From NCBI RefSeq assembly GCF_030684315.1, contig NC_081369.1, positions 2,966,689 to 3,030,688 on the forward strand: 64,000 nt of DNA. Direction: 5' to 3'. The notes beneath the pieces were generated by a model. The model ran no database searches. It had not been told where the DNA came from and saw nothing but the letters and a program-made list of their open reading frames with translations. This document shows positions 11,880 through 42,023 of the stretch, piece after piece. The stretch's first letter is position 1. Each line of letters begins with the position of its first letter. Both the position numbers and the translations under genes were made by a program. Origin of the DNA: Stegostoma tigrinum (Eukaryota).

Positions 11880-12161
11880 TGCCGCCAACCCCGGTGAATA
11901 TTGTTCGCCTGGCCTCTCATTCACTCGCACTCCTCTGTACAACTGTTGGTTTCTTCCCGGAAGATTTTAACCTCACTTGGTATAAAAATGACAGTGAGAT
12001 TACTACTGGAATAAACACTACGGGAAGACTAACGGAAGAGGGACTGTACGAAGTCTCCAGCTCCCTCAGCCCTGTGGAGACCTGGTCTATTTATACCTGC
12101 CAGGTTTCTCATGTTTCTCTTGCGGTGCCAGAAAACTACAGTTACATGGTTCTTCCTGAGG
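11880..12161 (+). CDS. Receptor A, Ig C1-set exon (SIRP-like IgSF receptor)
   Basis: ttattcacAG acceptor and GTAAGC donor; phase 1/1, 282 bp, open. Encodes LLCTTVGFFPEDFNLTWYKN...GLYEVSSSL...YTCQVSHVSL (canonical C1 motifs), with 4 N-glycosylation sequons. Confidence 0.92.
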
Positions 12162-14525
12162 GTAAGCATGACAAATTTTCAATACTCGTGCAGTGCTGTT
12201 GTGTCTTGTATCCAGGGTTTCTATCTCCGCTGAGCTGAATTTGAACATTCTTACGGAAATTAATTGAAGGACCTCAAAGCTGTGAAAAATAAAGGTCCTA
12301 TTCATGACGTTCCAGGTTGCATGCCACGATATTTAGACAGTAATCTCTCAAAAGAAGACAAATTAGAGTCAGAATAGTTAAATGCTGCTATTCTTGTACA
12401 CAGAGAATTACGTCACTGTGTTGGTATCGGAAGGGAGGAGAGAACGAAATTGGATTGTGGTATTTTCTAAATGCACCAGGAGATGTGCATGTTGCTAGTG
12501 ATTATGTTTGACGTGAACACGTACGGTGTGATGTGAAAGAATCATGCAAATGCCTAAAGTTGCTTCGCTTGTTGGCTTCTGAATTTTTATTAATGAAAAT
12601 AAATAGATATTATGCGCATAATGGAAAGCCATATTATGATCAACGTGAAGCTACAAGTTGTTTACCCTTTTGGAAGAGGCTAGGACCAGAGGCCACAATC
12701 TCAGAATAAGGGAACTTATATTTAAGGCAGAAATGAGGAAAGATTTCTTCTCAAAGAGAGTTGTTGAATCTGTGGCATTCTGTTAGAGCAGAGAGCAGTT
12801 GAGGCTGCGATTTTAATTATATTCAAGGCAGCAATAGAGAGATATTCATTCCGTAAGGGATTCAAGGGTTGAGGCAGCGAGGCAGGAAAGAGGCGTTGGA
12901 GACTGTCAGGTTAACGAAGATCTCATTGAGCAGCGGGGAAGATTCAGTGGTCTGAGTTGTCTGCTTCTACTCCTGCATCTTACGGTCTTCCAAGTATATA
13001 AAGAAAGCATGGGCATGCATGGCAGCGACGATTAATAAAGGAATGTTCTAAAGAAATTGCCCTTTGCACTCACCAACAAACCTGCGTGCAATTTCGAATA
13101 CACAAGATGATGAGACGTACACCGAGAACTGGGAATAATCCGGAGGAGGGACATTAGATTGATAATCAGTTTAAAAGTTGATTCATTATGATGATTTGTT
13201 ACTGGAGAAGCAGAGACTTCACAGCGTTTATTTCAAAAGATAAATAGACCCGACCCTTTACACGCTTTGAGAGAATTTGAGTGCGATAGAATTGAGAGAA
13301 AGGTGGTGCAGACTCACATGGCATGGAAGTTCAGGGCAGTTTAAGCTGTTAGGCCAGGTGTCTCTGAAAAGATATCACGCACATCTGGAATAAGAAACAG
13401 ACTGTGCTCCTTCATTGTGTCCATTTATGCTTAGCTGGACAGAGTTTTGGAAATGATCGATATCATAAAGCATGAAATAGTGTGTAAAGTATACAGGCTA
13501 GCAATCACATGTCTACTCGTATTCCCGCCGTTGTTCTTTTTTCATCTTCAGTTATTTATCGAGTTTTCATCTGAAGTTTCTCTTAAAGCAGGTTCTGCCA
13601 TACTTAAAGTTAGCATTCCCAGATCACAGCAATTCACTTTCAAAACATCTCACCAACTGCACCCTCACCCCACAAATCTTCCTACACCCCCCTGTTGTTT
13701 TATTTCTTCTTGTGTCAGTCTTCACAAATCTGTATTTTCGTGTCGCCAAGGCAACTGCTGTCAACAATTTCCTTCTCCTTTATCATATAGAAAAGCTGTG
13801 AAATTGACCACATCTACTGAATCTTTTTTCGTCTTCGATTTTGGATTCAGGAGTGGTGCTTGCACCCATTCGCCTATACAATGGAGACACAGGGTCCTGG
13901 GATCTTTTTAGTTCGTCACTATGACAATTCTTCGAAAACATTGACCTCTTTCCTTTAGCCTGGTGTTCACATTTGGACACAATGCACCAGATGAAACCTT
14001 TGTAGTGTTTCCTAGTTTTGAGAACGTCACTTCCTTTGTTTAGACTTCAATTGCTCCATTTGGATATTATTTATGTAATCAAGCTTAGCATTTGAGCAAC
14101 CAACACTTCGAATCCCAGATGTTCACTATAAACCACAATACAATGAATACCTCGATCAAGTTCTCCAAGCTTGACTTGTCATTAGGCCTAACCTAAATTT
14201 CTTCCAAATGATTGTGATTAAGGATTTCTCCACAACTTTGGCCTGACTGCTTTATCTTTACTGACTTCAGCTATTTCCTCATTTAAACTAATCACTTCTT
14301 TCAACTGTTGCACGTTCGTTTGTGGTTTAATTCGGTTCATGTGTCACTTGGTCAACATGACTATATTAGAGCCTTGCGTTCAATGATAAGTGGAAGTAAT
14401 CGGAGTAGCTGCTTTGGCAGAGATGGTTTGAATCGTCGATGCAGACTGTGATTTGGCGTTGTCAATTTCTGTCGTGTTACCTATTACTTAAAATGCTGAC
14501 ATTCCACCTTGTCTCTCCCTTTTAG

Positions 14526-14639
14526 AACATCAAGGCGGCACTTCCCCATACGCCTTCGTGCTTGGTTGTACAGCTGGCGCGTTTATAATTTCAATTCTGG
14601 CAATTCTCGTCAAGTGGTGCAAAGCAGACGGATCTACTG
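14526..14639 (+). CDS. Receptor A, transmembrane exon
   Basis: tctctcccttttAG acceptor and GTGAGA donor; phase 1/1. Encodes EHQGGTSPY-AFVLGCTAGAFIISILAILV-KWCKADGST (uncharged TM, then basic stop-transfer residues). Confidence 0.82.
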
Positions 14640-14989
14640 GTGAGACATGACATCGTGTTGATTCTGAACTCGATTTTCGTCATAAAGACGATTTTCGTCT
14701 TTATGGCAATAAAGATCTGCTGTTCTTGACGCAGGTTGTCAAATCGCTTTTATTTACAGCTCTCACCGGCACTAACTGATCACATCCGATATGTTCTGCC
14801 ATTGTCTTCAAATTTCTTCTAGCTGCTTTTCACTAACGCAGCAGGAAGGAATGGAAAAGCCGGTGGTTAAATGGGGCAGATAGGAATGAAATCTTTGAGA
14901 GCAGTGTGCACAAAATACAACCTATCATCCCCATGTAGAGCAGAATGTGAATCTGATCACGAGTGAAATATCGTTTCATTCTCTGACAG

Positions 14990-15033
14990 GTGGCGCGACT
15001 GCTGAAGACATGAGCAGCCAGTCCGAGGAACAG
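14990..15033 (+). CDS. Receptor A, short cytoplasmic exon 1
   Basis: ttcattctctgacAG / GTCAGT; phase 1 to 0; GGATAEDMSSQSEEQ. A homologous 44-bp segment occurs in paralogue B (24836-24879). Confidence 0.72.
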
Positions 15034-15749
15034 GTCAGTTTCCTTTCGTAACAATTAAGAACCAAATTGTGATTGGGATTTTGTGTGCGCACAAGTAAAT
15101 TATGTCTATATTCCTGGAACCTCAGACTTGCTGCTTATATAGGAATGCATGGTTAACATATCGAGTTGATGCTATCCTCTATGCGCTCCTCTAATATGAC
15201 AGGGATCTATCTGGGGTAATGATATCCGGGTCCAACCAAACCTACCGCTTTCTAACACAAGTGTTGCATGCTTTGTGTTGCATGCTTTGTGTTGCCAGTA
15301 TCAGTTAGGCTGCTCTTCAACCACGAGAAAAGATGCAGCTCGATTCTGTGTTTCTCCAATATTCCTCTCGTGAAATATCTGAGCGGGTCTGAGTCTGTAC
15401 ACTGGCGCTGCCGAGGGAGATTTCACCCTATTCTTGACGCCACGCCCCAGCAGAAAGTCTCACCGTCTGAAACATGCAAAATCAGAACTTGCGTGGACGA
15501 TTCAGTAGCATTTGCACTTGTTTGAGGTCTATTCGGCCAGGATATTTTCTTCTAACTTGGGGGGAATGGGGTGAGTAATCTGATGAACGAGTGGCAATAA
15601 AGATCTGCTGTTCTTGACGCAGGTTGTCAAATCGCTTTTATTTACAGCTCTCACCGGCACTAACTGATCACATCCGATATGTTCTGCCATTGTCTTCAAA
15701 TTTCTTCTAACTTGGCATGTAGGTCATATTCCGACAAAATTCGCATCAG

Positions 15750-15860
15750 ATCAAAAATGGCAGCGAGGTAATGACTCCGAATTACGCTCTTCTTAGCTCC
15801 ACCGAACAGAGCAAAACTGGGAAACCGCTAACCGAGGAATACAGCGTTGCCTATGCGCAG
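15750..15860 (+). CDS. Receptor A, cytoplasmic exon 2 (Tyr motifs PNYALL and VAYAQ-I/V)
   Basis: Weak ..gcatcAG acceptor and CAG|GTATCA donor; 111 bp, phase 0/0. IKNGSEVMTPNYALLSSTEQSKTGKPLTEEYSVAYAQ. Conserved in paralogue B. Confidence 0.7.
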
Positions 15861-16002: not shown

Positions 16003-16173
16003 ATTAAACACCCTACGGGTGGTAACGTGGCGTATGCTTCGTTGAATTTCACCGCTTCTGAGAAAACGGCAGAAAGAAAGCAGTGGAAGGAGCAGGCGGA
16101 ATGTGCAGAGGTCATGATAAACAAAGGAAGCGGAAACTCCCGGAGTTCCACGAACAGCAAAAATGTCGAGTGA
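16003..16173 (+). CDS. Receptor A, terminal cytoplasmic exon (ITIM VAYASL)
   Basis: ttcctttcacAG acceptor; IKHPTGGNVAYASLNFTASEKTAERKQWKEQAECAEVM...NVE*; AATAAA at 16392-16397. Confidence 0.78.
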   Translation: MKHPTGGNVAYASLNFTASEKTAERKQWKEQAECAEVMINKGSGNSRSSTNSKNVE

Positions 16174-17660: not shown

Positions 17661-19989
17661 GTTTGCCTTAGCTTATAGTAATTTCTAGAGAACATAGACT
17701 TAAGAACTAAATCTTGCTCAATAGAATAATACTCCGATACCATAACCGAACTAAGGAGTATTTGGCTCATGGCCTTCAAATCAAGGATATCTTTCCTTTC
17801 ATTAAGGAATCAAAATTGAACGCAAGTATTATCTTATTGGGTTGCACACATTGCACAAAATCTATTTCATTGTATATTATCATTCTTTTCGAATAAAACT
17901 TAACATGTGACCAGATTCATTGATTACTTACTGTATTGGAATGTTTCTTAGTCTTCGTTGTAGCTCTCTACGAGATTCCCAAATTAAGGGGGAACACAAT
18001 CTCCCCATTCCTTCACGATTTTTTTTGCTGTTCATTCTTAATAATTTCAATGCACCTTCAAACTATGCTCCAGCCATTCTCTTCTTTCCCAGTTGCGTAA
18101 TGTGTGCATTGATTGCAAACATGGATTTATAAATGGCAGTCATCTAATTCTGGTTACTGATGTAGAGTGTACATAGTTGTGCTTCAAGCTCAAGTTGCTG
18201 TGACTCTGCACTGGTAAAAGCCTGGACTTCCCAGCCGCAAGTGAAAAATATTTTTTTTCTGATTTCTTTCTATTAACCAACGTTAAATTCATGGTAATAG
18301 GTTATCTCAAATCTCATAAATGAAATTATTTCTCGTATCCTTTACTGTCAATCCGTATGAATTTAAAAGCCTCCACTTCTCATCTGCCCTAATAATTGCA
18401 GCTTCAAGAAATGTGACAGGCTTACCCAATGTGATTTGATGTTTACAAATCTCCATTGATTCTACCTCATCATATACTTTCCCAAAGGCTTAGTTAAAAC
18501 GGCCTCAACAACGCAATTTACCATTTTCTTAATGCGAACTTTAAATTACCTGATGAGCTCACTTCCTTCTCACCCGTTTCTGAAGAGTCCCGACTCGAAA
18601 CGTCAACTTTCCTGCTCCTCTGATGCCACCTGGCCTGCTGCGCTCCTCCAGCTCCACGCTGTGTTATCTCTTATTCATGCGTCCTCTTTTTCTCAACACT
18701 TCGCCCACGACCCACCTTTGCATCACCCACTTACCACCCAAAACCCCTCACACTTCCAAGCAGAGATCAACATCTTACATGGAAAGCAGCTTTTCATTTG
18801 ATACATGCAAAGCCACATCTTGGAGATCAAAGCTAAACTATTACTAAAGGATAAAAGGTGACAATTGTGGAGGATGTGTTGACCTTCGTGCCAGTTAGTG
18901 AAGGTTACAGTGTCTCAGTTTGTTGCTCCCGAAGTTATTCTGATGTACACGAGTTCTATCCAACCAGGCTGGGGCTTTCATCTTCCCTGACTGATTGGTT
19001 CTTTGATTTGCTGCAATCTTCTTCTCTAATTGTCTTATTATGTTGTTTTATTTTGTCATCAAATATCGTGTCGCCAACGAACAATTTCGAGCTTTATCCA
19101 AGAACAATCTAAGTATTAAGTGATCAATATTCAGCTGTAAGCACCATGTAACAAGGGCAAGATAGCGACAGGGCTTTCTTCAAATTCATTTTTGTCGGGT
19201 GTGCGCATCGCTGGCTGGCCAGCATTTCTCGTCCGTCCCTGGTTGCTCTTGAGAACGTGGTGATGAGCTAGCTGCCTTCTTGAACGACTGCCGTCCACCT
19301 GCTGTGAGTTGATCCACAATGCCATTAGGGAGGAAATTCCAGGATTTTGACCTAACGACAGTGAAAGAACGGCGATATATTTCCAAGTTCAGGATGGAGA
19401 GTGGCTTGCAGGGGAACTTGAAGGTGGGTGGCGTACTCATGTAGAATCCCGACAAGTTCACAGAATCCCTACGGTGTGGACACAGGCCATTCGGCCCAAC
19501 AAGCCCACACCACACCTCTGAAGAGCACCCCGCCCAGACACACCCCCTGCCCTTTCCCTGCAACCTGAAACTTCCCATAGCTCAGCCATCGAATTAACAC
19601 ATCCCTGCACACTACGACAATTTAGCACGGCCAATCCAACGAACCTGCACATCTTTGGACTCTGGGTGGAAGGTGGAAACCTATGCAGACACGGGAGAGT
19701 ATGCAAACCCCACACACAATACTGCCCTTGCCGTTCTAGATGGAAGTTACCTTGGGTTTGGAAGTTGCTGTCTGAGGATCTTTGGTGAAATTCTGCAGTG
19801 CATCTTGCAGACGTACACTGCTGTTCCTGAGCGTCGGCGTTGGCGGGAGTGGATGCTTGCGAATGCTCTACTTGCAGCTCCACTCTGCTCGGCAGTTCTC
19901 GTTTTTTTTATTTGTCCTTCCTTTTCTGTTCTCGTTTCTTCTCCCTCCCTCTGCAGTAATTCTATCCGCACTCTACCCGTTTTAATTAA

Positions 19990-24336: not shown

Positions 24337-25746
24337 GTCATCAGCACTCTACTTCCCCAAATATAACAAAGTGTGAAGCTGGAGTAACACAGCAAGCCAG
24401 GCAGCCTCATGGAAACAAGAAAGTTGACGTTTCGGTTCGAGACCTTTCAGGAAAAAAATCTTTCCACATTCTTTATGCCTTTGATGTGCAGTGGGTGGGT
24501 TTATAACTTTAACTATGGCAATCCTCGTCAAACAGTGAAAAAGATCTGCTGGGGAGAAATGGCATTGTCTTGACTCTGAGCACGGTTTTCATTTCTTGAT
24601 ACATTTCCCTGCTGCAGCCAGAGGGGATGTAGGAGGGCTAAAGTTAAATAGGGCGAACTGGTGTGAAATTTTCCAAAACAATGCGTATAACATGGAGATT
24701 ACTTCATATTCAAGCAGAGCGGAATGTTAATGTTCGGTAAGTCTGCTCACTTTGCTTCAATTGTAGCTAATTTCTGGCGGACGTGTGACACATGGTGAAA
24801 TTGATCATTAGCAAAGTCACTTTGTTCTCCGATAGACAGCACTGTTGCTAAGGCCATGAGTTGTCAATTTTAGGAACAGATCAGCTTCGATTTGTTATAG
24901 TGAGAAAGTAAACTACGTTGTGTACTCACAGATGACTTATGTCGATGTTCCCGGAACCTAATTACACGATAATTCCCATCAACGAGTCCGTTCTCCGAGT
25001 GCTGACTGTCACTGCCGCTGAGGACGATTCAGCCTCACTCCTGGATCCCGACTGACGAGAAAAATAGGCATAATCCGAAGTATGCAAACTCAGAACTTGA
25101 GTTAACTGTTCAGTCGCACATGAGTCAGTTCAGGGTCTATTCAGCCAGAGTAATTTCTATCAGTTGGGGTTGTGAATGATTATTCCAATTAACAGGTGGC
25201 AACCAAGATCGACTGTCCTTGGCACCTGTTATCACATCCCCGTTGTCACTTTCAGCTCTGATCTGCACTAACTCATCAATATCATTTGTTATTATCATCA
25301 ATCTGTATTTTGTAACTTCGTAAATATGTAATATTTGAGCAAAATTCTCCTCAGGTGAATCGCACAGATAGGCAAAGACTCCGATTTACGCTGCTGTCAA
25401 TTTCAGTAAGCAGAGGGAAAATGGGATCCGAGTAACCAAGGAAGAAAGTGTTGACTATTCGCAGATATCCTACTTCCCAAGTAGGGTCGCTCTGACACAA
25501 ATCTGATCACAGTAATGATCACCGGCAACTTGAATGATTTTATGAAGCCAAGTAAGAAGAGCTAGTCACATTTCGCTGTTGTTTACACAAGCTAAGCACC
25601 GGAGAAATGGGGAACAGAAATCGCACTGCTTGCGAGGAAATGGGAAGAAGAAAACGGAGGAAGGAGCAGGTGGTATATGCAGAGGTCAAGACAAACAAGG
25701 AAAGGGGAAACTACAGGACTCCACCCACACGAACAATGTTCAGTAA
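24337..25746 (+). pseudogene. Receptor paralogue B: disabled TM and three cytoplasmic exons
   Basis: Colinear homology to 14526-16173. TM 24337-24551 (stops, mini-PLE insertion, donor GT>GG); cyt1 24836-24879 (stop, donor AT); cyt2 25355-25464 (frameshift; TPIYAAVNF, VDYSQ); cyt3 25591-25746 (VVYAEV). Intron and 3' flank homology runs from ~24130 to ~27500. Confidence 0.85.
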
Positions 25747-28599
25747 TGTTAAAGTTACATAGGGTGGTTGTATCATTGTTTATTTGGATACTAAAGCTAA
25801 CTACATGTGTTAGTTTGCTTGTGAGCCATACTGTCATTGAATGGAGTTGGAGGAACGACCAGGAGTTGTAACGGTAGCTAGACTCTGGAAAATGAACCTT
25901 TGTTTCGTTTCAAATCTCCCAATTCCTGCAAAAACAATGAAATAAATGTATCGCTGTCACAATTTTAAATGACAGTGAAAAACATTGAAGCTCCTTGTTC
26001 AGTCACATTGAAATCGAACGGGCTGTTTACTTGGATCATTCATGTCATACAGTATTGCTTAGAATTTTATCTTGATGTTTACAGCACTGGAAGTGAACAG
26101 GTCTCGCCCACAGTACACGCTCTACAGAAACTTCCTCCTGCTCTGCTTCACAAATCACAAAGAGATAGCCTTCTAATGATTTATATCTAATGATTTTGCC
26201 CAGATTCTACTTCGATCCATACTTGACACCATCCATTCTTTATGATGGCAAATGCACTTTTCTAAACCTTCATTGGGTTTTGCAGTTTCTCCTGAATTTG
26301 TTTTTGTCTAGAGGCTGTCTTTTGTTTATAGTTTCTACCTCCAACACCACCGATAATTGCAAATAGCTCCTTCATGTCCACTCCATTAATAATATTGCGT
26401 TAATACAGTAACATTTATCAAAAGGAAGAAAAACAGGAGTATGAAATTCATTACGATTTTGAAGACATTACCTTTAATTCACCTTTTGATACCCTCCAAT
26501 GCCCCATGATTCGTAGAATATCCTTAAAATATATCTATATATTACTTAGATGGCTGAAACTTAATTGCAATCAAGAGGGAATTTTCATGATAACCAAATT
26601 TCTAAAGCACTTTTCAGACAAGCAGAGATATTTGGCAAGATGTTGGGTGTTGCAATATAGCAATAGCTTCCATGTTGAGGTAGTCGCATTCTTCTTAGGT
26701 CCGGAATTCAAAAGATATGCACACCTTGCGGAAAAGGCCTTCTTGGTCCTGAATGAGCAGCATTTTTTTTTAGATCAAGTTCTGTGCTCCTTAGCTGAGG
26801 GCAACAATTGCCAAAAGCAACTCCATTGAGCCTATGAACCAATTTCTTTTTCCACATTCCAATGGTTTGCCTCACATTATATCTATTTCCAGGGGATATT
26901 AACTTATGAACAATATAATATAATATTCTAATATAATGAGCGAAATCATGGAGAATTCAGTTCACGATCTCCAAACCAGGAACACCCGTTTTTCAGTAAA
27001 GAAATCAAAAATGAATGTCATACAACAAGTATTGTGTTAGTCGGGCAGGATAAAATTCTATTAAATTTATTCAATTGTGTGTTACAATTACTGTCTAAAA
27101 GAGTGAATGCCTAACTAGATTTCTTGATTAACGTGTTGGAATTGTTGTTTGTTGTGGTTCGTCTTCAAGCCTCGCAAATTATAATGAAGCACAGTGTTCC
27201 CAGTTTTTCGTCATTTATGAAATGTTTGTAATTCATTCCTTTGTATTGCGAAGGCTTTAACTTCACAGGTCTCGAACTGTGCTTCAGTTGTCACTTTTAC
27301 CCACAGTTATTCAAGCTATCATAATCTTCCATCTAAATACATCCTCTTAACAGTTTAACTGTTCATGCATTTTTTCAGATCAAATTTCTATTAACTGCTA
27401 ATATGGAAATATCAGCAGTGGTCACTTCATATTGATCACTGAAATTGATTGCAAACGACTCGGACTTTGAATCAGACTCAAATCATTGCACTGAAAATAA
27501 AATATTTGAGTCTCCTGATGCGAAAATGGAAATAGTCCCACCTTAATTTATTTCCAACAGTATGGCCCCTACATTTATGATGGCTTCCGGTTTAATTCCG
27601 GTGACCACACCCTTCTGTCCTTTTTGTCTTTGGCGTTTTAACGTGGTCTAATGATTTAAAACATAAGCTTGGGAATGGAACTTTACGTAGCATGGTCTTT
27701 CCATTTGGCTGTACTCAGAATTGAGTGTAACAAATTTAGGTCATTCTCCCAAGTTACTTTTATCTTTTTTTTGGTTTTATTTTCATCTGACAGATGGACA
27801 GTCAATTATCTCCATCCAGTCCAGTCGTAACTACTGACATTGTAATTTTAGGTGTCATCTTCAGCAACATGGAAGGAGACATATACAGCAGCAAACAGAT
27901 CAGTGATCTTCAGCTTAGATTTCAACGAGGTGATTTGATTGCTCCCTTCGTTGAATCCTTGGTCCAATCCTCAATGAACTTATGAGGTGTGGCTTGAAGC
28001 AGACCTGGAAAAAAATGAAGTGAATGGTGCATGTCAGTACATTTCCACATGTTGAGATAAATCAGTGTATATGCATTGAAGTTTTATTCACAGTTCTTTT
28101 CTCTGGCAAGGTGATTTTAAGGTATCCCTCATGACATTCCTCTTACAAGGTAGGGTGGCATCGTGGTTTAGTGGTCAGCACTGCTGCCTTACAGTGCCAG
28201 GGTTGAATTCCACCATCTCGTTGTATGGAGTGTGCATGCTGTCTGCGTGGTTTTCTTCCCACAGTCAAACGATGTGCAGGCTAAGTGGTATGGCTGTGGT
28301 GTCCAGGGATGTAGGGTTTAGGTATGCTCACCATGGGAAATGTAGGGTTACAGGGTCGGTGGGATGCCCTTCAGAGGCCAGTGTGGACATGTTGGGTTGC
28401 TGGACCTGCTCCCACACTGTAGGAATTCTGTGAATACTCTGATACCTTATTTCATACATCTTAATCAATTTTACAGATGCTTAAGGTTCTCTAAAGTGTT
28501 TCGTTTTGCATATATTTATTTTCAATGATCTGTACATCTGTAAGCCAGAGTTTGTTTTGAAAAATGTTTGTTCTTGCATTTTGAATGCTCAATAAACAA

Positions 28600-29304: not shown

Positions 29305-29472
29305 GACTCCTCTGAACAGGCAACAAAAAACAACGGGACTGCGGTCAGCGCAGAGAGCGGACACTCACCTCCTTTCTTCTCGAATACCTTCAGGAAACAT
29401 TCACATAATTTGGCACTCCTGAATGTCACATTGAAGAAACCACCCCCGGGGAAGTCCTGCAGGCAGTAGATG
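29305..29472 (-). mobile_element. L1-Tx1-type LINE ORF1 fragment (ZCCHC3-like)
   Basis: The - strand reads IYCLQDFPGGGFFNVTFRSAKLCECFLKVFEKKGGECPLSALTAVPLF, resembling fish Tx1/L1 ORF1p N-termini. Confidence 0.6.
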
Positions 29473-31140: not shown

Positions 31141-31243
31141 TCTTTTATTTTCCATTGTGTTAAATACGTATTATTTCTTAAATTATCATCCAGCGCACCA
31201 CTATCTCTGCTGATAATCCTGGGTTACTCTTTATTTCTGGCAG

Positions 31244-31574
31244 CTGCTAACGGGACAGTGGTCTCAGCGAGTCAGGTCCCTGCTCGCACCACTCGACCGA
31301 AAGGCTCAAATACATTCATTAATTGTTCTGCGCCGTTTTTTTTTTCTTTTCCTTCTCAGCGTATTGGCGTTTGGTTATGGTGGAGTGACCGCAAACGTTC
31401 GACGCCGGAATCGACCTCAGACAAAGTGGAAACAGAGAAGGTTTTCAAACAAGGATCTGCCTAGTTCCACCTGCTCAATGCGAATTTCCAACATTCCCGG
31501 TTGTATTCCTGCGGCGTCTAGAAAGGGAGCGGGAAGTTTTTCAATGGCACTGCAAATGAGCTCGTTTATACACG
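31244..31574 (+). pseudogene. Receptor paralogue C, V-set exon with germline J-like G strand (disabled)
   Basis: tttctggcAG / GTGAGT. SQVP..GSNTFINCS..VWLWW..SA*FHLLNANFQHSRLYSCGV*..FNGTANELV; two in-frame stops plus a frameshift near the end. Confidence 0.8.
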
Positions 31575-32809
31575 GTGAGTGATACTAAGGGGGTTGGGGG
31601 TTGTTGAGTTCCTTGAAGTTAATCTGGTACATATATGAGAAATATTGCTGCTTTCAACTATTGGCTGTCAATGTTGTCCGTTCACACAGAGAGCCAGACT
31701 ACTGAATGGCACGTGGAACCCATGCCGCTCTTCTCGGTAAATCCGGTCTGAAGAAGCGTCAAATCGGATTCCAACAGCTAACGTCGCCTGGCGCTCCACA
31801 AATGCTTCCAGGTTTGATGAGTTACTTCGATTTTTTTTATATTTCACGGCACATTGCCAACATCCGCAACATTTGAATTTATACTGAATTAATCACTGCT
31901 TTGTCATTCCGCATTAAGTGGTTTCGTTCCTTACTTTTTCTACTAACTGACACAACATCACGGGATACTAGCACTATTCACAAATCCCACATTGACAGCG
32001 TCTGTCTCTTTATCCATGTGAAGCTGACGGGCCTATAATGCTATTCAGGTCACGGCAGTTGGTGTGTTGAATGCATTAGTTCAGCATTCTCAGGTCTGAA
32101 ACTTCCGCGTTTAGATGCCATGGAAAGCAGTCGATGTGATTTGTATAAAATAGAGCGATGCGTGAAGTTACAGGACAATGGAAGCCATGGCTGTCCCATG
32201 TGACTTTAAGCCTTGGGTTTCTACTTGGTACAGCTCAGAGCTTTTACTGGGGAGGTACATGAAGCCCTGACGAGTGTTAGGATGCATCTTGGATGTGACA
32301 TAGGCTGCAACGGTGGGTATAGTTTGTTGATGTTGGTGATCAAGGTGCTGTTGCGAGTACTGCTTTGAATTACTTTGAATCAGAAGAGCAGACCTGCGTC
32401 CAAATTTACACGGAAGAGTGCAATATACATTTTCTCTTTCTTCGAATTTCTTGAAATTCCTTGAATTATACATGGGAGATTGGAATTAGATTGTCACTAC
32501 ATTGAATTTAATAACGAATGTAGGACAACATGAGCAGGGCAGCAACGTACAAACATAAAATGAAGAGTCAATTTACTGAAGATGTAAAGGTAAAGAAAGG
32601 TAAGAAGGGCCCCTATCCGAAACTTCAACTTTTCTGCCCCTCTGATGCTACTTCGCCTCCTGTGTTCCTTTAGCTCCACACTGTTGTCTCGGACTCAAGC
32701 ATCTGCATTTCTTGCTGTCTTTCAAGGTAAAAACTGGTTGCATACCAAGTAACAAGTGATAGACACGTCTAAGAGATTTCACAACCAAATAAACAGATAA
32801 ATGGTTCTG

Positions 32810-35012: not shown

Positions 35013-35293
35013 TACCCCGAAGCCAGTGAAAATTACTCAGCTGTCCTCTCCAACCCTCACATTCCTCTGTACAGCAGCTGGCTTCTTCACAGGAGACTTG
35101 AACCTCGGCTGTTCGAAAAGTGACAGCGAGACTGCATCTGGAATAAACACAAGTTGAAGACAAACAGAAGAGGGACTACATACAGTTTCCATCTCCCTCA
35201 GCCCTGTGGAGATCGGGTCTGTTAATATGTGCCAGGTTTCTCATGTTTCTCTCGCTGTCCCAGCAAACGACAGTTACATGGTTGTTCATGAGG
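35013..35293 (+). pseudogene. Receptor paralogue C, C1 exon (disabled)
   Basis: Aligns end to end with 11880-12161 (FLCTAAGFFTGDLNL..MCQVSHVSLAVPANDSYMV). 281 bp (1-bp frameshift), in-frame TGA, core Trp lost, donor GT>CT. Confidence 0.9.
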
Positions 35294-36803
35294 CTAAGGG
35301 TCTCAAATTCTCGATACACGTCTGCTCGGTATTAGCTTGGAATCCCCTCTTCCTGCCTTCGCTGATATGAAATTAAACACTCTGAAAGGAAGTAGCTAGA
35401 AGGCATATAGTTATGCATAAGAGGTATTTTACTGAGGTCCCAGGTAAATGTTACGATGTTTAAACACGTGGTGTGTCAGTCCAGGACAGGACAGAGCCAG
35501 AATAGTTAGGTTTGTGACAGTTGGAAAGAATTGAGAGAGAAAGATGGGAAAAACTGACGTCATCTTCAGCAATCTGACTGTCGCAGATACAACTGGCCAT
35601 CACTCTATCTGTACGAGTGACAACTGACTGTTCTTGCGAAAATGAAGTCAAATTCAGTGAGCACCCACACCATCGTGTTGTTTGGCCCTACAATCGTGTT
35701 AAATGGGGCAGATTTAGAACAGTTAGAATAACTCAAGGCCCGGCATCGCTGAGGTGCTCTGGGCCATCAACAGGAACAAAATTGTACTCAAACCAATCTA
35801 CAAAGCATGTCACGCCAATTTCACCACCCTATCATTACCACCAAACAGGTGATCAATCCTAGTTTCAAACAACAGTGCAGCAGGAAATGCCAAGAGGAGT
35901 ACCAGGAACACCAGAACATGTGGTAAAAACATGGCAAACTTTCTAAAAACATGGCTAATTACATGCCAAACAGCACAGACGACAATTAGTAGAAAGGACT
36001 CAAAGTTACCCAAACAAATGCACCACATCAAAACTCTGCAATCCTGTCACACCCAGTCTTGAATAATGGTTGGCATCAAATAAGTCATTGGAGCAGGAAG
36101 TTCTAGGAATACCCCGCCCCACAATTAATGGATGCTCGGGAGATCGTGCAGGGAAAAAAGGCTTAGATATTTTCAGAGAGTGGTTAAGGCGTGGAATGCC
36201 CTGCCTGCCAATGTAGTTAACTCAGCCACATTAGGGGCATTTAAACAGTACTTGGATAACATATGGATAATGATGGGATAGTAGGAGGCGAGGGGATTAG
36301 ATTAGTTCACAGGTTGGCGCAACATCGAGGGCCGAAGGGCCTGTTCTGCGCTGTATTGTTCTATGTTCTATGTTCTATATTTACAACCATCTTCCGCCAG
36401 AAGAGCCAAGTCGATGATCCATCTTGGTCTCTTCGTTTGGTCACCAGCGCCACAAATGGCAATGAAAAATATCAGCCGACGTGATGTTCAGAAACATTTG
36501 GATGGATTGGATATTACAAAGGCTATGGCGGTTGATACTATTCTAGCAATAGCATTGAAGAGTTGTGTTCCAGAGCTTGTCGCAACTCTTGCCAAATTGA
36601 TCTAAGATAACTGCAACTTTGGTATCTACGTGAAAATTTGAAAAAGCACCTGGGGTATGCCCATGTGCGGAAAAAGCATGACAAATCCATTTTGCTCCAA
36701 ATGCCATTCCATCGGTCAGCTGTCCTTCATCAACTAAATGATTCTATGTGTCATCTCCAATGCTATCAATTAGCACTTTCTCAGCAATAACCTGCCCAAT
36801 GAC

Positions 36804-38338
36804 AGAAATAATAGGAACTGGGTGCTGGAGAATCCGAGATAACAAGGTGTGGAGTTGAATGCACACAACAGACCAAGCAGCATCTTAGGAGCAGGGAAGC
36901 TGGCGTTTCAGGCCTGAACCCTTCATCAGAAATTGGGGTGGGGAAGAAGGTTCTGAAATAAATAGGGAGAGAGGGGGAGGCTGATTGAAGATGGTTAGAG
37001 GAGAAGATAGGTGGAGAGGAGACAGACAAGTTAAAGAGGTGGGGATGGAGCAAGTAAAGGTGGGAAGGTAGGAAGGAGATAGGTCAGTCCAGGGAAGACG
37101 GACCGGGGCAGGATGAGGTTAGTAGGTTGGAAATGTGGGTGCAGCTTGAGGTGGGAGGAGGGGATAGTTGAGAGGAAGAACAGGTTAGGGAGGCGGGGAC
37201 GAGCTTGGCTGGTTTTGGGATGCGTTGTGGGGAGGGGAGATTTTGACGCTTGTGAAATCCACATTGATACCATTGGGCTGCAGGGTTCCCAAGCGGAATA
37301 TGAGTTGCTGTTCTTGCAACATTAAGGTGGCATCGTTGTGGCACTGCAGGAGGCCCTGGATGGGCAAGTCGTCTGAGGAATGGGAGGAGGAGTTGAAAAG
37401 GCTCGTGACCGAGAGTTGCAGCTGTTTATTGCGAGCAGAGGGCAGGTGTTCTGCAAAGCGGTCCCCAAGCATCCGTTTGGTTTCCCGATGTAGAAGAGGC
37501 CACAATGGGCACAGCGGATCGGTATATCACATGGGCAGATGTGCAAGTGAATCTCTGCTTGATGTGGAAAGTCTTCTAGGGGCCTGGGATGGGGGTGAGG
37601 GAGGAGATGTGGGGGCAGGTGCAGCACTTCCTGAGGTTGCAGGGGAAGGTGCCGGGTGTAGTGGGGCTGGAGAGGAGTGTGGAGCAGACAAGGGAGTCAC
37701 AGAGAGAGTGGTCCCTCCAAAAAGCAGGCAAGGGTGGGGAGGGAAATATGTCGTTGGTGGTGGAATCGGATTGCAGGTGGTGGAAGTGTCAGAAGTTGGT
37801 GGGGTGATATGTGAAGACGAGGGGGATTCTCTTTTGGCTGTTATTGCGGGGACGAGGTGTGAGGGATGAGTTGCGGGAAATGCGGGAGACACGGATAAGG
37901 GCGTTCTCGACGACTGCGGGGTGGGGGGAGGGGATGTTGCAGTCCTTGAAAAATGAGGACATCTGAGATGTGCGTGAGTCGAATGCCTCATCCGGGGAGC
38001 AGATGCGGCGGAGACCATGGAATTGGGAATCGGGGATGGCGTTATTGCAGGAAAGTGTTTGGGAGGAGGTGTATTCCAGGTAAATATGGGAGTTTGTGAG
38101 CTTGAAAAGGATATCCGTTTCTGGGTGGTTGCCTGAGATGGAGACAGAGAGATCCAGGAAGGTGAGGGGGGAGTTTGAGATAGTCCTGGTGAACTTAAGG
38201 TTGGGGTAGAAGGTGTTGGTGAAGTGGATGAACTGTTCAAGCTCCTCATGGGAGCACTAGGCGGCGCCGACACAGTCATCAGTGTAGCGGAGGAAGAGGT
38301 GGGGTTTAGTGCCAATGCAGGTGCGGAAGAGGGATTGT
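36804..38338 (-). mobile_element. Penelope-like element (family 2), 5'-truncated: RT C-terminus, GIY-YIG domain and 3' hammerhead-like end
   Basis: RYTDDCVG (RT), CGLFYIG / ETKRMLGDRFAEHL (GIY-YIG); CTGATGA..GAAAC core on - at ~36900-36930; TSD TGCCCAATGAC (36793-36803 / 38339-38349); inserted into a CR1/L2-group LINE. Confidence 0.85.
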
Positions 38339-41300
38339 TGCCCAATGACGACCACTTAAGGTTCTGCCAGAACCATTCAGTTCCTAATCACATTACAGCA
38401 TTCGTTTCAAACTCAGAGAGAAGAACTGAACTTCAGAGAGGAGGTGAAATTAACTGCTGTCTGGAATAGGTCAGCACTGGCCCGGTGTAAAGAGTCCCAG
38501 CAAAATTACAGCCAATGGAAATCAGGCGAAAACTCTCCTCTCATTGAAGTCTTACCTCGCACGTAGAAAGATCATGAAGATTATTGGGAGTCAGTCAGCT
38601 CTGCATTCCACCATCTTGATATCGGAATAGTGAAGACCGCTGATACTTATCCAAAGTTCAGCTCCACGGACCACTTCTCAGACATTAAATCGGTCCATGT
38701 CAAAATGTAACAAAACATGAATGGTATCCAGTCTTAGACTGATATGTGGCAAGTGGCAAACATGCCAATAAACTGCCAGAAAATGACCATCTCCAATTAA
38801 ACAGAACCGAACAACTGGCCTTTGAAATTCAAAGCATTACCATCGCCGAGTATCCCCTCAATAACTTTCTGAAGGTAATTGCTGAACTCAATGTGAAACG
38901 GACAGTTTTTAAAAATCCTTCATACAGCACGTATCACCAGAGTTAGATTTGGAGGGCAACATACCACCTGGTATTCCTGAATCTTACACCAAAAGCCTCC
39001 AGTTCTAATATGGTGCCAGCAACACTGCACACGGCCAGGAATAGCCTCATCATTCTACATTCCTGCCCTGGACGTCTTTAGTTTGCGTTCGTCCAGAAAT
39101 GCACCTCATCACCCGACTTGCCAATCGCAGAATTGTGACAGCAAAGAACGGAACCGTTTAGAAATGACAGAACTGGACCTTATATTCCTGAAGTGACGCC
39201 TTTACTTTGAATTTTGGAAATGAGTTCCCACCACACTATAATCCCCGTTTTGCTGTCGTACTGTACAGTCACCCATATGAGTACCTGTCTCTATAAATAG
39301 GGGAAAAAGTCAGTGCCAACATCTTGGATCTGCAACATCGGACCGCATAACGTTACATTCAGGCGTAGGTCACCCAGAGCCACGCATTCCTAACATGGCC
39401 ATATCATTCTGCACTGATGACATGATCCCGTCACCATAGGTTCTAGAATGAATATCAATCATTCTTCATGGAGAGCATTGTTCCTCATTGTTTAAACATA
39501 CAAAATATCAAGAATGAACAAATAAACGTGCGAGACAACTTGAATCAGAGTACATAATGTAGAAGTCATTGCTGAGACATAGCAAACACAGTACTGGTAA
39601 CCAATGCTACCGTGTTAAAAGGTTTTCAGGAAAGATAGGATAAATATTGGTAGAAAAGCGTACTTAACACGAAATCGTCTCTGCAGTGATAGAGAACATA
39701 CCGAGATGCACTCAAGTAGTGCTTAATTGTGGACGTGATGAACAAAACAGGAAAGAATCTCGGGTTGTACTGGAGGTTGCGCGTAGGTCCCTAGATCCTA
39801 TGAAGTAGTTTTGCATTTCTTTTTAACAACAATTGGCAGTGTTGCAAATTTATCAGTATGTCAGCCTTTCTATTCCAACTCTTGTTTTTCATTGATTAGA
39901 AAAGTGATTTTCACGTGGTTTCTGGCATTCACATGTCTTGGTAAAAGCAAACAGGTGTATTTACAAGAAGGTAGTGAACAGCATTAGCTATGAGTTTGAA
40001 TTGATCTATTGCATTTAAATTAAGTATTTTGCTGGTACTCCTTCAGTCTTTGCCCTGAGATAGTTTAAGATCAAGTGGCAGTGCCATGATGGTGTGTTAT
40101 GGGGCTAGGATCTGTGCATGTTGCTTTACTGTCGGTCCGACACGGGATCGCTTACACCTGGACAGATGGTGAAACAGAAGTTCAATTTTTAAAAACAATT
40201 GGAAAAGAAAGGCTGGTACAGTGATGATCTTATTACTATTGTTATCAAAAATATACAAAGTCTTGGTCACTGATATCTTCAGGGAAAGGAGTTCATATAT
40301 GCTGAGTGCCTTCAACGTCGCTCCAATCTGGATTTGTCACTGGATTCTCTCCTGTCTTTAACTCTCCCAGCACCTTCACATTCCACATGGTCTTTCCAAA
40401 TTCAATCCCATCGATCTGTTTTCTAACTGTGTCAACCCTCATAACCATCAATAACCCATCATTCAATTTTCATTCCGAGAGCCATTTTGCCTTGCATTTA
40501 TCCTCCTTACTGACTTCTGCAGACCAAACACACTTCCTTCCCCCAACGTTCAAAACTTGTCTCAAAACCTTTTCATTGACTCTTCTGTGCTAGAAAATAT
40601 CTCTAAACACTACATTCTTGCCAACCCTTATCAATTAATTACTAATTTCTCAAAACCGAACATGTTCGTCATAATTTTATGCAGAAAGCTCATTAATCAG
40701 ACATGAGTTGGAATAAATCAAGGAAAATTTTGAATTTTGAATAAATCAAAATCAATCCATTAATAAACGTGATGATGATTATTGAATCTATTGCATCCAG
40801 GCTCCCATTTTGGGACCTTACAAGAGAACACCTCCAACCTTTCTTCTCCAGCTTTCCTCCCGTCTGCAGCTGAAATCGATAGGCCCAATTTATTTTCCTC
40901 CACTTTATGCAGTCACTGTATCACATTGTCCCGGACTGGCTTGGTTTACTGCACCCTCTGGGCTCTACAGTGCCATAAACTCTCTCAGCAATTGACAATT
41001 GGTCACTCCTTTCTCAGTTTTATCTCAACAAAGTTATTCAAGGATATGTCATCGGGTCCAACTGTACGATATGGTCATGCATTTCTATTTCATCAGCACC
41101 TCTGTCAAACTCCACCCTGCCGCTGTGCTACATCCCCAACTCGCTCCAAATTCGCCCGTCACTGCCACCAGTCGGACAACACTGAACTCAATTAAGGGCC
41201 GTTGCAACCAGGAACCTTTCACGTCATGCAAAGATATTTCATCTTCTCTTGGTCCCCAGTCAGACCTGAGCCATTGTAATCTTCCAACACCCACTCTCAT

Positions 41301-41703
41301 TAATCCGCGTTCAAAAGCACCAATTCACTGACGTTGCCTCAGACACCAAGTGGAGTGCCTGAATGCACCAGCAAATCCCACATGGTCATAATTTTTCCAT
41401 TAATTTTTGCTGGATCGTGCAGTCTTCCTGCTCGAGAACATTGTCCCTATCCAGAGTGTCTGTGCTCCATGTGCTGTGCTCTCCTGCGGCACTGGGAATA
41501 ATTTATACAGGTCTATAAATATTTACCTTCATTTGGCGAATTGGAAAATGAATGGAAATAACGGGAACTCGAAAGAGGCCACTTCTTTTTTATGATTAAT
41601 TATTGGGTTTTCTTTCATGAGGTTTCTTACCCATTATTTCACCCATTTTTATATCTCAGACCACTAAACTTGAACAACTAATGTTTGTGTATGTTTCTGA
41701 CGG

Positions 41704-42023
41704 ATACTGACGAAACCCCTCTCTCTGTGAAGCAAATCCCCGCTTACCTGACTGCACTCGAAGTTACAAATGTATCTACGTATTGCTCCATCCCGCCTTT
41801 CGCTCTCAAAATATCTGTGAATGTGTGCTGGTGGAGAGACGGACAGGGCATAACTTTAGTTCCAACAGCAGATCAAAGGAAAATAATGTTACCCTTCAAC
41901 AGGTAGTTTCTGTGTTCCATTTGTTGAATGTGAGCTTCTGGAACTCCGGAATTTATTAATGCAACGTCAGCGTCTTGGGCAGAAGGACTTCTAATGGGAA
42001 TGGAACTCGCCTTATTGTACACG
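41704..42023 (+). pseudogene. Receptor paralogue D, V-set exon with germline J-like motif (disabled)
   Basis: LSVKQIP..NVSTYCS..NVCWWR.. [stop and frameshift] FHLLNVSFWNSGIY*CNVS..GNGTRLIVH|GTGACT; acceptor AG mutated to GG. Confidence 0.85.

What the first reader, a model, noticed from the sequence alone, without database searches (positions are those of the whole stretch)
11880..42023. Tandem cluster of antigen-receptor-like (VJ-C1) inhibitory receptors in a cartilaginous fish
Seen: one splice-consistent open C1-TM-cyt1-cyt2-cyt3 gene, a disabled C1 paralogue, a disabled TM/tail paralogue and two disabled V exons, all on +. Assembled, the family unit is V(J)-C1-uncharged TM-multi-Tyr tail. 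Known: V plus C1 outside rearranging receptors and MHC is rare (SIRP, tapasin, some B7 members); SIRPalpha has V-C1-C1 with four cytoplasmic tyrosines. Inference: this is an expanded shark SIRP-like family with a single C1, possibly an NK or myeloid inhibitory receptor cluster relevant to antigen-receptor ancestry. The ORF track misses most of it.
Basis: partly seen in the sequence, partly recalled or inferred. Interest (0 to 1): 0.8.

Follow-up and report, generated by a model that had tools for sequence, protein, structure and literature searches.

The report
Shark SIRP-like V-C1 receptor gene cluster
This stretch holds the back half of one apparently intact gene, plus broken copies, for a shark immune receptor that resembles a single antibody or T-cell-receptor chain with an inhibitory tail; it belongs to a family that databases label only "SIRP-alpha-like".

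Summary

- **Gene A (+ strand):** five open exons with AG/GT borders and matching phases. They are C1 (11880-12161), an uncharged TM (14526-14639), cyt1 (14990-15033), cyt2 (15750-15860) and cyt3 (16003-16173).
- **Broken copies:** a TM/tail copy (24.45-25.76 kb), a V exon (31216-31574), a C1 exon (35013-35293) and a second V exon (41700-42023).
- **Missing piece:** gene A's V exon is not in the window.

**Family.** It belongs to a V(J)-C1-TM-multi-Tyr family. My searches found this family only in sharks, rays and chimaeras. NCBI names its members automatically, mostly as SIRP-alpha-like. The family holds both ITIM-tailed members and basic-TM, short-tailed members, so it looks like a paired-receptor family.

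**For a SIRP link:**
- Family tails align in register with a lungfish SIRP-alpha-like tail.
- V plus C1 align along their length with a coelacanth SIRP-like protein.
- The nearest single C1 domains outside the family include these lobe-finned-fish proteins.

**Not supporting orthology:**
- The family has one C1 domain, where SIRP has two.
- The C1 tree is unresolved.
- PDB sequence and fold searches do not single out SIRP.

Expression and synteny could not be tested.

The scan already found intact members of this family on the same genome piece (s1-881498, s1-881879). I found no paper that describes the family.

The parts
11880..12161 (+). Gene A, Ig C1-set exon (94 codons, phase 1 in and out, open)
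   Evidence: Pfam C1-set E 9.6e-13. AG/GT borders. 62-65% identity to family proteins P0006, P0008 and P0009.
14526..14639 (+). Gene A, connecting peptide plus transmembrane exon. No charged residue inside the hydrophobic span. Phase 1 in and out.
   Evidence: Sequence read. Phases. tblastn with P0018, E 0.002.
14990..15033 (+). Gene A, cyt1 mini-exon (44 nt, phase 1 to 0, acidic/Ser-rich)
   Evidence: Found with homologue tails: 14989-15036, 44-54% identity, E 0.035-0.16 in a 1.1-kb search space. AG/GT borders. It is the only exon that brings the TM phase into the cyt2 frame.
15750..15860 (+). Gene A, cyt2 exon: one YxxL motif plus one canonical ITIM (V-x-Y-x-x-I across the junction)
   Evidence: Aligns to the P0008 tail, E 0.002.
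16003..16173 (+). Gene A, cyt3 exon: one canonical ITIM (V-x-Y-x-x-L). The fourth family Tyr is replaced by Cys. Stop TGA at 16171-16173.
   Evidence: (E 1e-7 with P0018). AATAAA at 16392 and 16616.
14704..14824 (+). Recent 121-bp intronic copy of 15592-15712 (99% identical), lying between the TM and cyt1 exons
   Evidence: A 118-letter contig of this repeat has depth 16-20, against about 9-12 for the neighbouring contigs, in runs X1-X3; run X4 lists none. The B paralogue has only the downstream position (read by eye).
15592..15712 (+). Source copy of the 121-bp repeat, just upstream of the cyt2 acceptor
24452..24541 (+). Pseudo-exon: TM copy (unit B), two in-frame stops
   Evidence: tblastn with P0018, 52% identity. 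Translation.
25002..25052 (+). Pseudo-exon: cyt1 copy (unit B), runs into a stop
   Evidence: Read by eye against gene A's cyt1; no statistic.
25366..25470 (+). Pseudo-exon: cyt2 copy (unit B). Both Tyr motifs are kept. A stop lies just upstream in the frame.
   Evidence: tblastn with P0008, E 6e-4. Translation.
25592..25762 (+). Pseudo-exon: cyt3 copy (unit B). The third Tyr is lost and the fourth is kept.
   Evidence: DNA 64% identical to gene A.
31216..31574 (+). Pseudo-exon: leader-end plus V(J) exon, two stops, G-x-G of the J motif broken, GT donor kept
   Evidence: tblastn with P0008, E 5e-16. Translation and donor.
35013..35293 (+). Pseudo-exon: C1 copy. One stop, conserved Trp lost, 281 nt instead of 282, donor GT changed to CT.
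41700..42023 (+). Pseudo-exon: V(J) exon. One frameshift near 41900 and a stop at the Y-x-C position. J-like motif and GT donor intact.
   Evidence: two frames, E 1.5e-18 with P0011.

Best explanation
The region is part of a tandem array of genes for a cartilaginous-fish family of non-rearranging IgSF receptors. Family members have a leader, a V domain with a germline-fused J-like strand, one C1-set domain, a transmembrane helix, and a tail built from a repeated two-tyrosine exon.

What is shown:
- Gene A keeps five open, splice-consistent 3' exons: C1, TM, cyt1, cyt2 and cyt3.
- Three further units have decayed to fragments: a TM/tail half, a V plus C1 half, and a lone V exon.

What is inferred from motifs and from how ITIM receptors such as SIRP-alpha work:
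- If gene A is joined to a V exon upstream of the window, it encodes an inhibitory receptor.
- The V domain would bind a still unknown ligand.
- Src-family kinases would phosphorylate the two canonical ITIMs and the extra YxxL.
- SHP-1/SHP-2-type phosphatases would dock there and damp activation of the cell that carries the receptor.

Family members with Arg or Lys in the TM and short tails are the likely activating partners, as SIRP-beta is to SIRP-alpha. The family is the closest thing to SIRP that I found in these fish, but it has one C1 domain, not two.
For: Exon anatomy, phases and splice sites.

C1-set membership.

Pseudo-exons and their lesions.

Full-length homologues with the V(J)-C1-TM-tail plan. 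Their automatic names.

Size of the family: the HMMER scan of 1.84 billion proteins gave 710 hits at E<=1e-3, 204 at <=1e-10 and 6 at <=1e-30. Ranked by best single domain, 94 family proteins come first. Lungfish and coelacanth SIRP-like proteins follow at 33.7-39.0 bits.

Tail: alignment in register with the lungfish SIRP-alpha-like protein P0117 gives z 3.9-9.8 for 7 of 7 family tails tried. 0-3 of 500 shuffles reach the observed score.

V plus C1: aligned along their length with coelacanth P0187.

Paired types: 33 of 94 have a plain TM with an ITIM tail. 13 of 94 have a basic TM and a short tail without Tyr. P0170 (activating type) is 81% identical to P0161 (inhibitory type) over 251 positions.

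Constraint: dN/dS of C1-A against its dead copy is 0.53 over 92 codons. This fits constraint on at least one lineage.

Assembly check: DNA contigs confirm the letters of gene A.

Structure: the AlphaFold2 model of homologue P0006 has a confident V plus C1 ectodomain. The C1 part matches MHC class II, IgNAR and CD1 C1 domains at Z 13.7-14.8, rmsd 1.5-1.8.
Against: - Gene A's V and leader exons are not in the window. tblastn found no V hit in 1-11879. The only lead is an unchecked scan note of a V exon about 5.1 kb before the window (s1-882003). That would mean a V-C1 intron of about 17 kb holding an old LTR element.
- No RNA run holds the stretch, so neither transcription nor any junction is shown.
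- The fourth family Tyr is Cys in gene A, and the first Tyr motif is not a canonical ITIM.
- The cyt1 exon rests on weak matches (E 0.035-0.16) plus phase logic.
- The SIRP link is not exclusive. The deep nodes of the C1 tree are open.
- The human SIRP-gamma chain scores E 2e-10, below Ig heavy chains and UrIg2.
- V of P0006 matches Ig lambda, TCR-alpha and CD79b best, with no SIRP among the 60 rows shown.
- Foldseek lists Ig light and TCR chains. VIA lists Rst, B7-H6, Neph1, PD-L2 and butyrophilins for the two-domain unit.
- The 'SIRP' labels on the lungfish and coelacanth proteins are themselves automatic names.
Confidence: 0.7

Rival explanations
1. Everything here is dead, gene A included. 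On this reading it is a 5'-truncated or disrupted pseudogene whose last five exons simply have not yet picked up stops.
For: - No V or leader exon lies within the 11.9 kb upstream in the window.
- That stretch holds a pair of 90-91% identical direct repeats (1385-2052 and 8704-9469) around a reverse-transcriptase ORF. This looks like an old LTR element.
- The fourth Tyr of the tail is lost.
- A fresh 121-bp duplication sits in an intron.
- Three neighbouring units are certainly dead.
- No RNA run holds the stretch.
Against: - Five of five exons are open, with all eight splice sites intact. The dead copies each carry one to four lesions.
- All canonical C1 residues are kept.
- dN/dS is 0.53 against the dead copy.
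- A scan note places a family-type V exon about 5 kb before the window (s1-882003, unchecked).
Confidence: 0.3
2. The family is not a SIRP relative. On this reading it is a separate old VJ-C1 lineage, for example the shark counterpart of the avian/reptilian PRARP genes or a B7/butyrophilin-type branch. The SIRP-like tail would then be convergent or shuffled in.
For: - The C1 tree does not join the family to the SIRP C1 clade with support.
- PDB sequence and fold searches do not single out SIRP.
- B7-H6 is the second-best two-domain structural match: Z 16.9, rmsd 3.9, 190 residues aligned.
- NCBI pipelines give the family five or more different names, among them tapasin-related, NCR3LG1-like, CD276 homolog and lambda light chain-like.
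- ITIM tails are short motifs that can arise more than once.
Against: - The whole tail aligns in register with a lungfish SIRP-alpha-like tail, all four Tyr motifs included, and not just single motifs.
- Lobe-finned-fish SIRP-like proteins are among the best single-domain matches outside the family.
- Pfam prefers C1-set (48.7 bits) to the CD80-like and butyrophilin C domains (20 and 17.5 bits, both under their cutoffs).
- The PRARP paper could not be read, so that part is untested either way.
Confidence: 0.35
3. The exons are parts of a rearranging Ig light-chain or TCR locus.
For: The best Foldseek matches of the homologue ectodomain are Ig light chains and TCR chains (E about 5e-15 to 4e-14). 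V of P0006 matches Ig lambda V and TCR-alpha V. Some family members are auto-named 'lambda light chain-like'.
Against: - Both V exons carry the J-like strand in the same exon and end in a splice donor.
- C1 is followed by a TM exon and a multi-Tyr tail.
- The family C1 domains do not nest inside the multi-C1, Ig-like clade.
Confidence: 0.02

Closest known systems
SIRP-alpha / SIRP-beta (signal-regulatory proteins; Hatherley et al. 2009, PMC2785349, passages read)
   Same: - N-terminal V domain with a J-like G strand, followed by a C1-set domain.
- Uncharged TM.
- Tail with two repeats of a two-tyrosine unit, which aligns in register with a lungfish SIRP-alpha-like tail.
- Inhibitory and basic-TM activating members in one family.
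   Different: - One C1 domain, not two.
- V is not closer to SIRP V than to Ig lambda or TCR V in PDB.
- Orthology, CD47 binding and myeloid expression are untested.
- Gene A has lost the fourth Tyr.
UrIg / UrIg2 (shark non-rearranging VJ plus C1 genes; Flajnik et al. 2025, PMC12227049, section 7 and passages read)
   Same: Single-exon VJ, C1-type constant domains, found in elasmobranchs. The UrIg2 chain 9dmx_A is a PDB hit of C1-A (E 2e-13, three stretches).
   Different: - Nurse shark UrIg2 has nine C domains and the epaulette shark model eleven. UrIg and UrIg2 are described there as antibody-like and expressed mainly in liver and gill. This family has one C1 and an ITIM tail.
- Multi-C1 shark proteins (P0001, P0022, P0076) fall in other clades.
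- That paper does not mention SIRP (0 occurrences).
Ig light chains and TCR chains
   Same: V(J)-C1 ectodomain. These are the best Foldseek matches over 207-291 alignment columns.
   Different: No rearrangement: J is fused in the germline V exon. The receptor has its own signalling tail. There is no membrane-proximal Cys for a disulphide-linked partner in gene A's TM exon.
B7-H6 / butyrophilin / PD-L type V-C ectodomains
   Same: The rigid-body V-C arrangement of the predicted homologue model matches these at Z 15.2-16.9. Some members are auto-named NCR3LG1-like or CD276 homolog.
   Different: Pfam scores for the CD80-like and butyrophilin C domains are below their cutoffs, while C1-set is well above its cutoff. 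None appears among the 60 PDB sequence hits shown for C1-A.
PRARP (chicken non-rearranging VJ-C genes; Fu et al. 2019, cited in PMC10751288; paper not held)
   Same: [quoted passage not shown]
   Different: Could not be compared.

Membership tests
Ig C1-set domain | Match to the curated C1-set profile above its gathering score | tested here: met
   PF07654, E 9.6e-13, 48.7 bits against a cutoff of 21.
Ig C1-set domain | C1-type fold | tested here: met
   Tested on the model of homologue P0006, not on the window's own exon. Residues 107-201 match HLA-DP/DQ, IgNAR C3 and CD1 C1 domains at Z 13.7-14.8, rmsd 1.5-1.8.
SIRP family | N-terminal V-set domain with a J-like G strand | tested here: inconclusive
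   Present in both dead V exons and in all full-length homologues read. Gene A's own V exon is outside the window.
SIRP family | Two membrane-proximal C1-set domains (V-C1-C1) | tested here: not met
   One C1 exon runs straight to the TM exon by phase. 10 of the 12 homologues read have one C1; P0005 has two C1 motifs, and P0008 carries its TM and tail twice. Ray P0026 has a lineage-specific near-identical C1 pair.
SIRP family | SIRP-alpha type tail: uncharged TM plus four tyrosines in two repeated units | tested here: met
   Met for the family: 7 of 7 tails align in register to lungfish P0117, z 3.9-9.8. Gene A keeps three of the four positions, two of them as canonical ITIMs.
SIRP family | Activating partners with a basic TM residue and a short tail (SIRP-beta type) | tested here: met
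   13 of 94 family proteins. None in this window.
SIRP family | Phylogenetic grouping of C1 with SIRP C1 domains | tested here: inconclusive
   Polytomy: the family clades (SH-aLRT 86 and 93), the lobe-finned-fish SIRP clade (98) and the multi-C1 clade are unresolved. It was a quick tree of 76 rows on 107 columns, with no bona fide Ig/TCR/MHC/tapasin rows.
SIRP family | Conserved synteny with the tetrapod SIRP locus | not tested
The window's flanks hold only transposon ORFs.
SIRP family | CD47 binding and SHP-1/SHP-2 recruitment | not testable with these tools
   Needs protein experiments.
Rearranging antigen receptors (Ig/TCR) | Separate V and J segments that are joined somatically | tested here: not met
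   The J-like strand and a splice donor lie inside each V exon. I did not scan for recombination signal sequences.
UrIg / UrIg2 | VJ followed by several C domains | tested here: not met
   There is a single C1. The UrIg2 description was read.

The most novel reading that the evidence does not exclude
The family is the cartilaginous-fish orthologue or sister of SIRPs, and it keeps the ancestral single-C1 plan, VJ-C1-TM. That plan is the layout of one antigen-receptor chain, and here it already exists as paired inhibitory and activating receptors. On this reading SIRP-type receptors are as old as jawed vertebrates. The second C1 of bony-vertebrate SIRPs would be a later addition. That would give a living model of what a pre-rearrangement antigen-receptor relative on innate cells looked like.
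Probability: 0.3. Interest if true: 0.65.

Novelty: new variant of a known kind. Interest (0 to 1): 0.4.

Why it matters
C1-set domains outside Ig, TCR, MHC and their helper proteins are rare. SIRPs have been put forward as relatives of the antigen-receptor precursor (PMC2785349, passages read). That paper also says no SIRP gene had been identified in organisms that predate the adaptive immune system.

A large family of VJ-C1 paired receptors in sharks, rays and chimaeras, with a SIRP-type tail but a single C1, bears on that question. I could not find it described under any name, although its members are public under automatic names.

This particular locus adds less than the intact genes the scan found about 7 Mb away. 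Its value is in showing birth-and-death turnover: one candidate live gene among three decayed units, with exon-level lesions that can be dated. It also gives a testable exon model.

Tried and rejected
- **Regex scan** for C1, V and J signatures in all six frames. It found only the open C1 exon and missed all pseudo-exons. A looser two-Cys V pattern found nothing. Homologue-guided tblastn was needed.
- **RNA evidence.** All four runs listed for the stretch (X1-X4) hold it, none is on record as RNA, and all come from one sample. Laying them confirmed the DNA only.
- **Synteny.** Of 10 ORFs tested from the window's flanks, Pfam gave reverse transcriptase for two and a weak GIY-YIG match, under its cutoff, for one.
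- **C1 phylogeny.** The deep nodes are unresolved. It lacked named Ig/TCR/MHC/tapasin/B7/PRARP rows, because no tool gave me such sequences as stored proteins.
- **Reverse search from lungfish P0117.** It reached 10 proteins, all from lungfish, turtle or frogs, and no shark or mammal. It therefore says nothing on whether sharks also have V-C1-C1 SIRPs.
- **Fold searches.** These show V plus C1 but cannot pick a family.
- **Activating-type TM exon in the window.** None was found. The one match at 59438-59494 is to the odd C-terminal extension of gene model P0009.
- **Literature.** Eight answered searches found no description of a shark SIRP-like or V-C1 ITIM family. Fu 2019 (PRARP), Ohta 2019 and Flajnik 2023 (UrIg) are not held. 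Supplements are closed, so table S1 and figs S1-S2 of PMC12227049, which may list further VJ-C1 genes, were not seen.
- **Rejected reading:** that the B tail exons are alternative 3' exons of gene A. They carry stops.
Full report
**What is there**

The window has no N. A six-frame motif scan found one open Ig C1 signature, at 11828-12235 on the + strand. Pfam places it in C1-set: E 9.6e-13, 48.7 bits, cutoff 21. The CD80-like and butyrophilin C-domain models fall under their cutoffs.

Reading the DNA and checking phases by script gives five exons. All have AG acceptors and, except for the last, GT donors.

| Exon | Coordinates | Phase in, out |
|---|---|---|
| C1 | 11880-12161 | 1, 1 |
| Connecting peptide plus TM | 14526-14639 | 1, 1 |
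| cyt1 | 14990-15033 | 1, 0 |
| cyt2 | 15750-15860 | 0, 0 |
| cyt3 | 16003-16173 | 0, TGA stop |

- AATAAA follows at 16392 and 16616.
- The TM span has no charged residue.
- cyt1 is the weakest exon. I found it only with homologue tails (E 0.035-0.16 in 1.1 kb). It is, however, the piece that brings the TM exon's phase into the cyt2 frame. Splicing TM directly to the nearer acceptor at 15722 would hit a stop after 24 codons.
- The tail keeps a YxxL motif, two canonical ITIMs (V-x-Y-x-x-I and V-x-Y-x-x-L), and a Cys where the family has its fourth Tyr.

Each was handled on its own.

**The broken copies**

tblastn with 11 family proteins, a self-comparison of the window and direct translation show the following.

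- **TM copy**, about 24452-24541, with two stops.
- **cyt1, cyt2 and cyt3 copies**, at about 25002-25052, 25366-25470 and 25592-25762. They are 64-65% identical in DNA to gene A. There is a stop before cyt2. The third Tyr is lost and the fourth is kept.
- **V exon 31216-31574**, with two stops and a broken J motif.
- **C1 copy 35013-35293**. It is 60.9% identical in protein to exon A (E 1.9e-32). It has one stop and has lost the conserved Trp. It is one base short, and its donor GT is now CT.
- **V exon 41700-42023**, with a frameshift and a stop at the Y-x-C position. Its J-like strand and GT donor are intact.

All lie on the + strand.

No V exon for gene A lies in 1-11879. That stretch holds two 90-91% identical direct repeats (1385-2052 and 8704-9469) around a reverse-transcriptase ORF. 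An unchecked scan note (s1-882003) puts a family-type V exon about 5.1 kb before the window.

**Is gene A alive?**

For:
- Five of five exons are open and eight of eight splice sites are intact. Every dead copy has one to four lesions.
- dN/dS between C1-A and its dead copy is 0.53 over 92 codons.
- DNA contigs from four runs of one sample reproduce the exons without a differing letter. The only difference is G>A at 13053, in an intron, in one run.

Against:
- The V exon is out of view, at best about 17 kb away across an old retroelement.
- One tail Tyr is lost.
- None of the four runs listed as holding the stretch is on record as RNA.

I put the chance that gene A is functional at about 0.55-0.6.

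**What family**

A HMMER scan of 1.84 billion proteins with the C1 exon gave 710 hits at E<=1e-3, 204 at <=1e-10 and 6 at <=1e-30. The single-stretch hits at 45-67% identity are proteins of about 340-400 residues. Their plan is leader, V with a fused J-like strand (x-G-x-G-T-x-L-x-V), one C1, TM, and a tail with two or three repeats of a two-tyrosine unit.

Their names are automatic and inconsistent. Most are 'tyrosine-protein phosphatase non-receptor type substrate 1-like', which means SIRP-alpha-like. Others are 'SIRP beta-1-like', 'tapasin-related protein-like', 'NCR3LG1-like', 'CD276 homolog' and 'lambda light chain-like'.

A search with P0006 gave 40 hits at E<=1e-5. Of these, 39 name a shark, ray or chimaera, and one shows no species. 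That tool sees only relatives that share exact 5-residue words, so absence elsewhere is not shown.

In several species the members sit on one chromosome-sized record. For example, I count 14 of the 40 rows on one Heterodontus record of 99.65 Mb. Other notes of this scan call the genome zebra shark. I did not check this myself, but the two window C1s sit next to Chiloscyllium and Hemiscyllium proteins in my tree, with weak support (SH-aLRT 84).

**Paired types**

By the time there were 206 stored proteins. Of these, 94 score 54 bits or more on a single domain against C1-A. Among those 94:

- 33 have a plain TM and at least one ITIM.
- 13 have Arg or Lys in the TM and a short tail without Tyr.
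- The other 48 are fragments or mixed cases: 30 with no clear TM, 8 with a plain TM and no Tyr, 3 with a plain TM and Tyr but no ITIM, 4 with a basic TM and an ITIM, and 3 with a basic TM and Tyr but no ITIM.

In Heptranchias an activating-type member (P0170) is 81% identical over 251 positions to an inhibitory one (P0161). No activating TM exon lies in this window.

**How SIRP-like is it?**

For:
1. Ranked by best single domain, the proteins that follow the family include lungfish and coelacanth proteins auto-named SIRP-alpha-like or SIRP-beta-1-like (33.7-39.0 bits). A ray protein (37.7 bits) and a shark protein (33.9 bits) with many C1 domains are interleaved with them.
2. The cytoplasmic tails of 7 of 7 family members tried align in register with the tail of lungfish P0117. 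All four Tyr motifs line up. z is 3.9-9.8, and 0-3 of 500 shuffles reach the score. From memory, not from any call, the motif series of P0117 is also that of mammalian SIRP-alpha.
3. P0053 and P0006 align through V and the first C1 of coelacanth P0187: 27% and 25% identity, E 9e-20 and 2e-15 for the pair. The match to its second C1 is weaker.

Against:
- The family has one C1, where SIRP has two.
- The C1 tree (quick method, 76 rows, 107 columns) leaves the family's two clades, the lobe-finned-fish SIRP clade and the multi-C1 clade in a polytomy.
- In PDB the C1 exon hits Ig heavy chains first. Their scores are summed over several domains, and the best single domain scores 30.2 bits. UrIg2 follows at E 2e-13 and human SIRP-gamma at E 2e-10.
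- The V domain of P0006 matches Ig lambda V, TCR-alpha V and CD79b at E about 1e-5. No SIRP is among the 60 rows shown.
- The AlphaFold2 model of P0006 has mean pLDDT 71.4, with ectodomain blocks mostly at 74-98. In Foldseek it matches Ig light and TCR chains.
- In the representative-chain search it matches Rst, B7-H6, Neph1, PD-L2 and butyrophilin two-domain units at Z 15.2-17.1. The C1 part matches MHC class II, IgNAR and CD1 C1 domains at Z 13.7-14.8. No SIRP is among the 50 rows. A family that is not listed is not excluded.

So 'works like SIRP-alpha/beta' is well supported. 'Is a SIRP' is open, and one defining feature (V-C1-C1) is not met.

**Known or new**

- UrIg and UrIg2, the published shark non-rearranging VJ-C1 genes, have many C domains and an antibody-like role (PMC12227049, section 7 read). 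That paper does not mention SIRP.
- The shark MHC paper mentions UrIg, NKp30 and PRARP but not SIRP (PMC10751288, passages).
- Eight answered full-text searches found no description of this family.
- The PRARP paper, Ohta 2019 and the first UrIg paper are not held, and supplements are closed. A description could therefore exist that I could not see.
- The scan has met the family before on the same genome piece: an intact inhibitory member 7.15 Mb downstream (s1-881498) and an activating-type member 6.88 Mb downstream (s1-881879). Their follow-up notes reach the same reading. They are not independent evidence.

**Verdict**

The locus is a birth-and-death array of a SIRP-like V(J)-C1 paired-receptor family of cartilaginous fish, with one candidate live gene seen only in its 3' five exons. 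It is a variant of a known kind, SIRP-type ITIM receptors. It is of moderate interest to comparative immunology, and less so than the intact members elsewhere in this genome.

Noticed in passing
window 14704-14824 and 15592-15712: A 121-bp direct repeat, 99% identical and 888 bp apart, brackets the cyt1 exon inside gene A's introns. The downstream copy is the old one, because the B paralogue has that position only. The repeat holds a good-looking acceptor (pyrimidine run plus AG) that would lead into a stop after six codons. It also shows a faint, non-significant likeness to the start of a cyt2-type exon (E 0.41).
   Followed up: partly
window 12162-12238 and 35294-35334: The frame stays open for 25 codons past the C1-A donor. 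The read-through peptide, and the matching stretch after the dead C1 copy, weakly resemble the connecting peptide and TM start that follow C1 without a break in activating-type family proteins such as P0170. It may be a relic of an unspliced activating-type ending. The likeness is weak.
   Followed up: partly
window 1385-2052 and 8704-9469: Two direct repeats, 90-91% identical and 7.3 kb apart, around a reverse-transcriptase ORF at 6292-6813 (+). This looks like an old LTR element inside what would be gene A's V-C1 intron. Scan note s1-882230 describes its interior.
   Followed up: partly
window 43419-44389 and 45071-46023: A 974-bp inverted repeat at 94.9% identity. One arm carries ORFs with reverse transcriptase (44180-44989, minus strand) and a weak GIY-YIG match (43484-44095, minus strand; under the Pfam cutoff). 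It resembles a head-to-head pair of Penelope-type elements.
   Followed up: no
window 18556-18670, 21816-21955, 22216-22355, 23556-23685, 24359-24465, 29244-29315, 32602-32716, 36799-36930, 46238-46455, 47480-47565, 50734-50889, 61969-62162: A short interspersed repeat of about 90-140 bp recurs on both strands at 70-95% identity. Two copies 400 bp apart (21816-21955 and 22216-22355) are 95% alike.
   Followed up: no
window 37225-38345: A G+C-rich stretch with strong GC skew (0.32 in 36-38 kb). It has long overlapping ORFs on both strands. The 272-aa minus-strand ORF is Pro/Ser/Thr-rich and of low complexity. It was not identified.
   Followed up: no
window 59438-59494: A 19-residue match (74% identity, E 2e-5 to 2e-4) to the C-terminal extension of the Chiloscyllium gene model P0009, beyond its TM. 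It is probably repeat-derived sequence read into that model, and not an exon here.
   Followed up: partly
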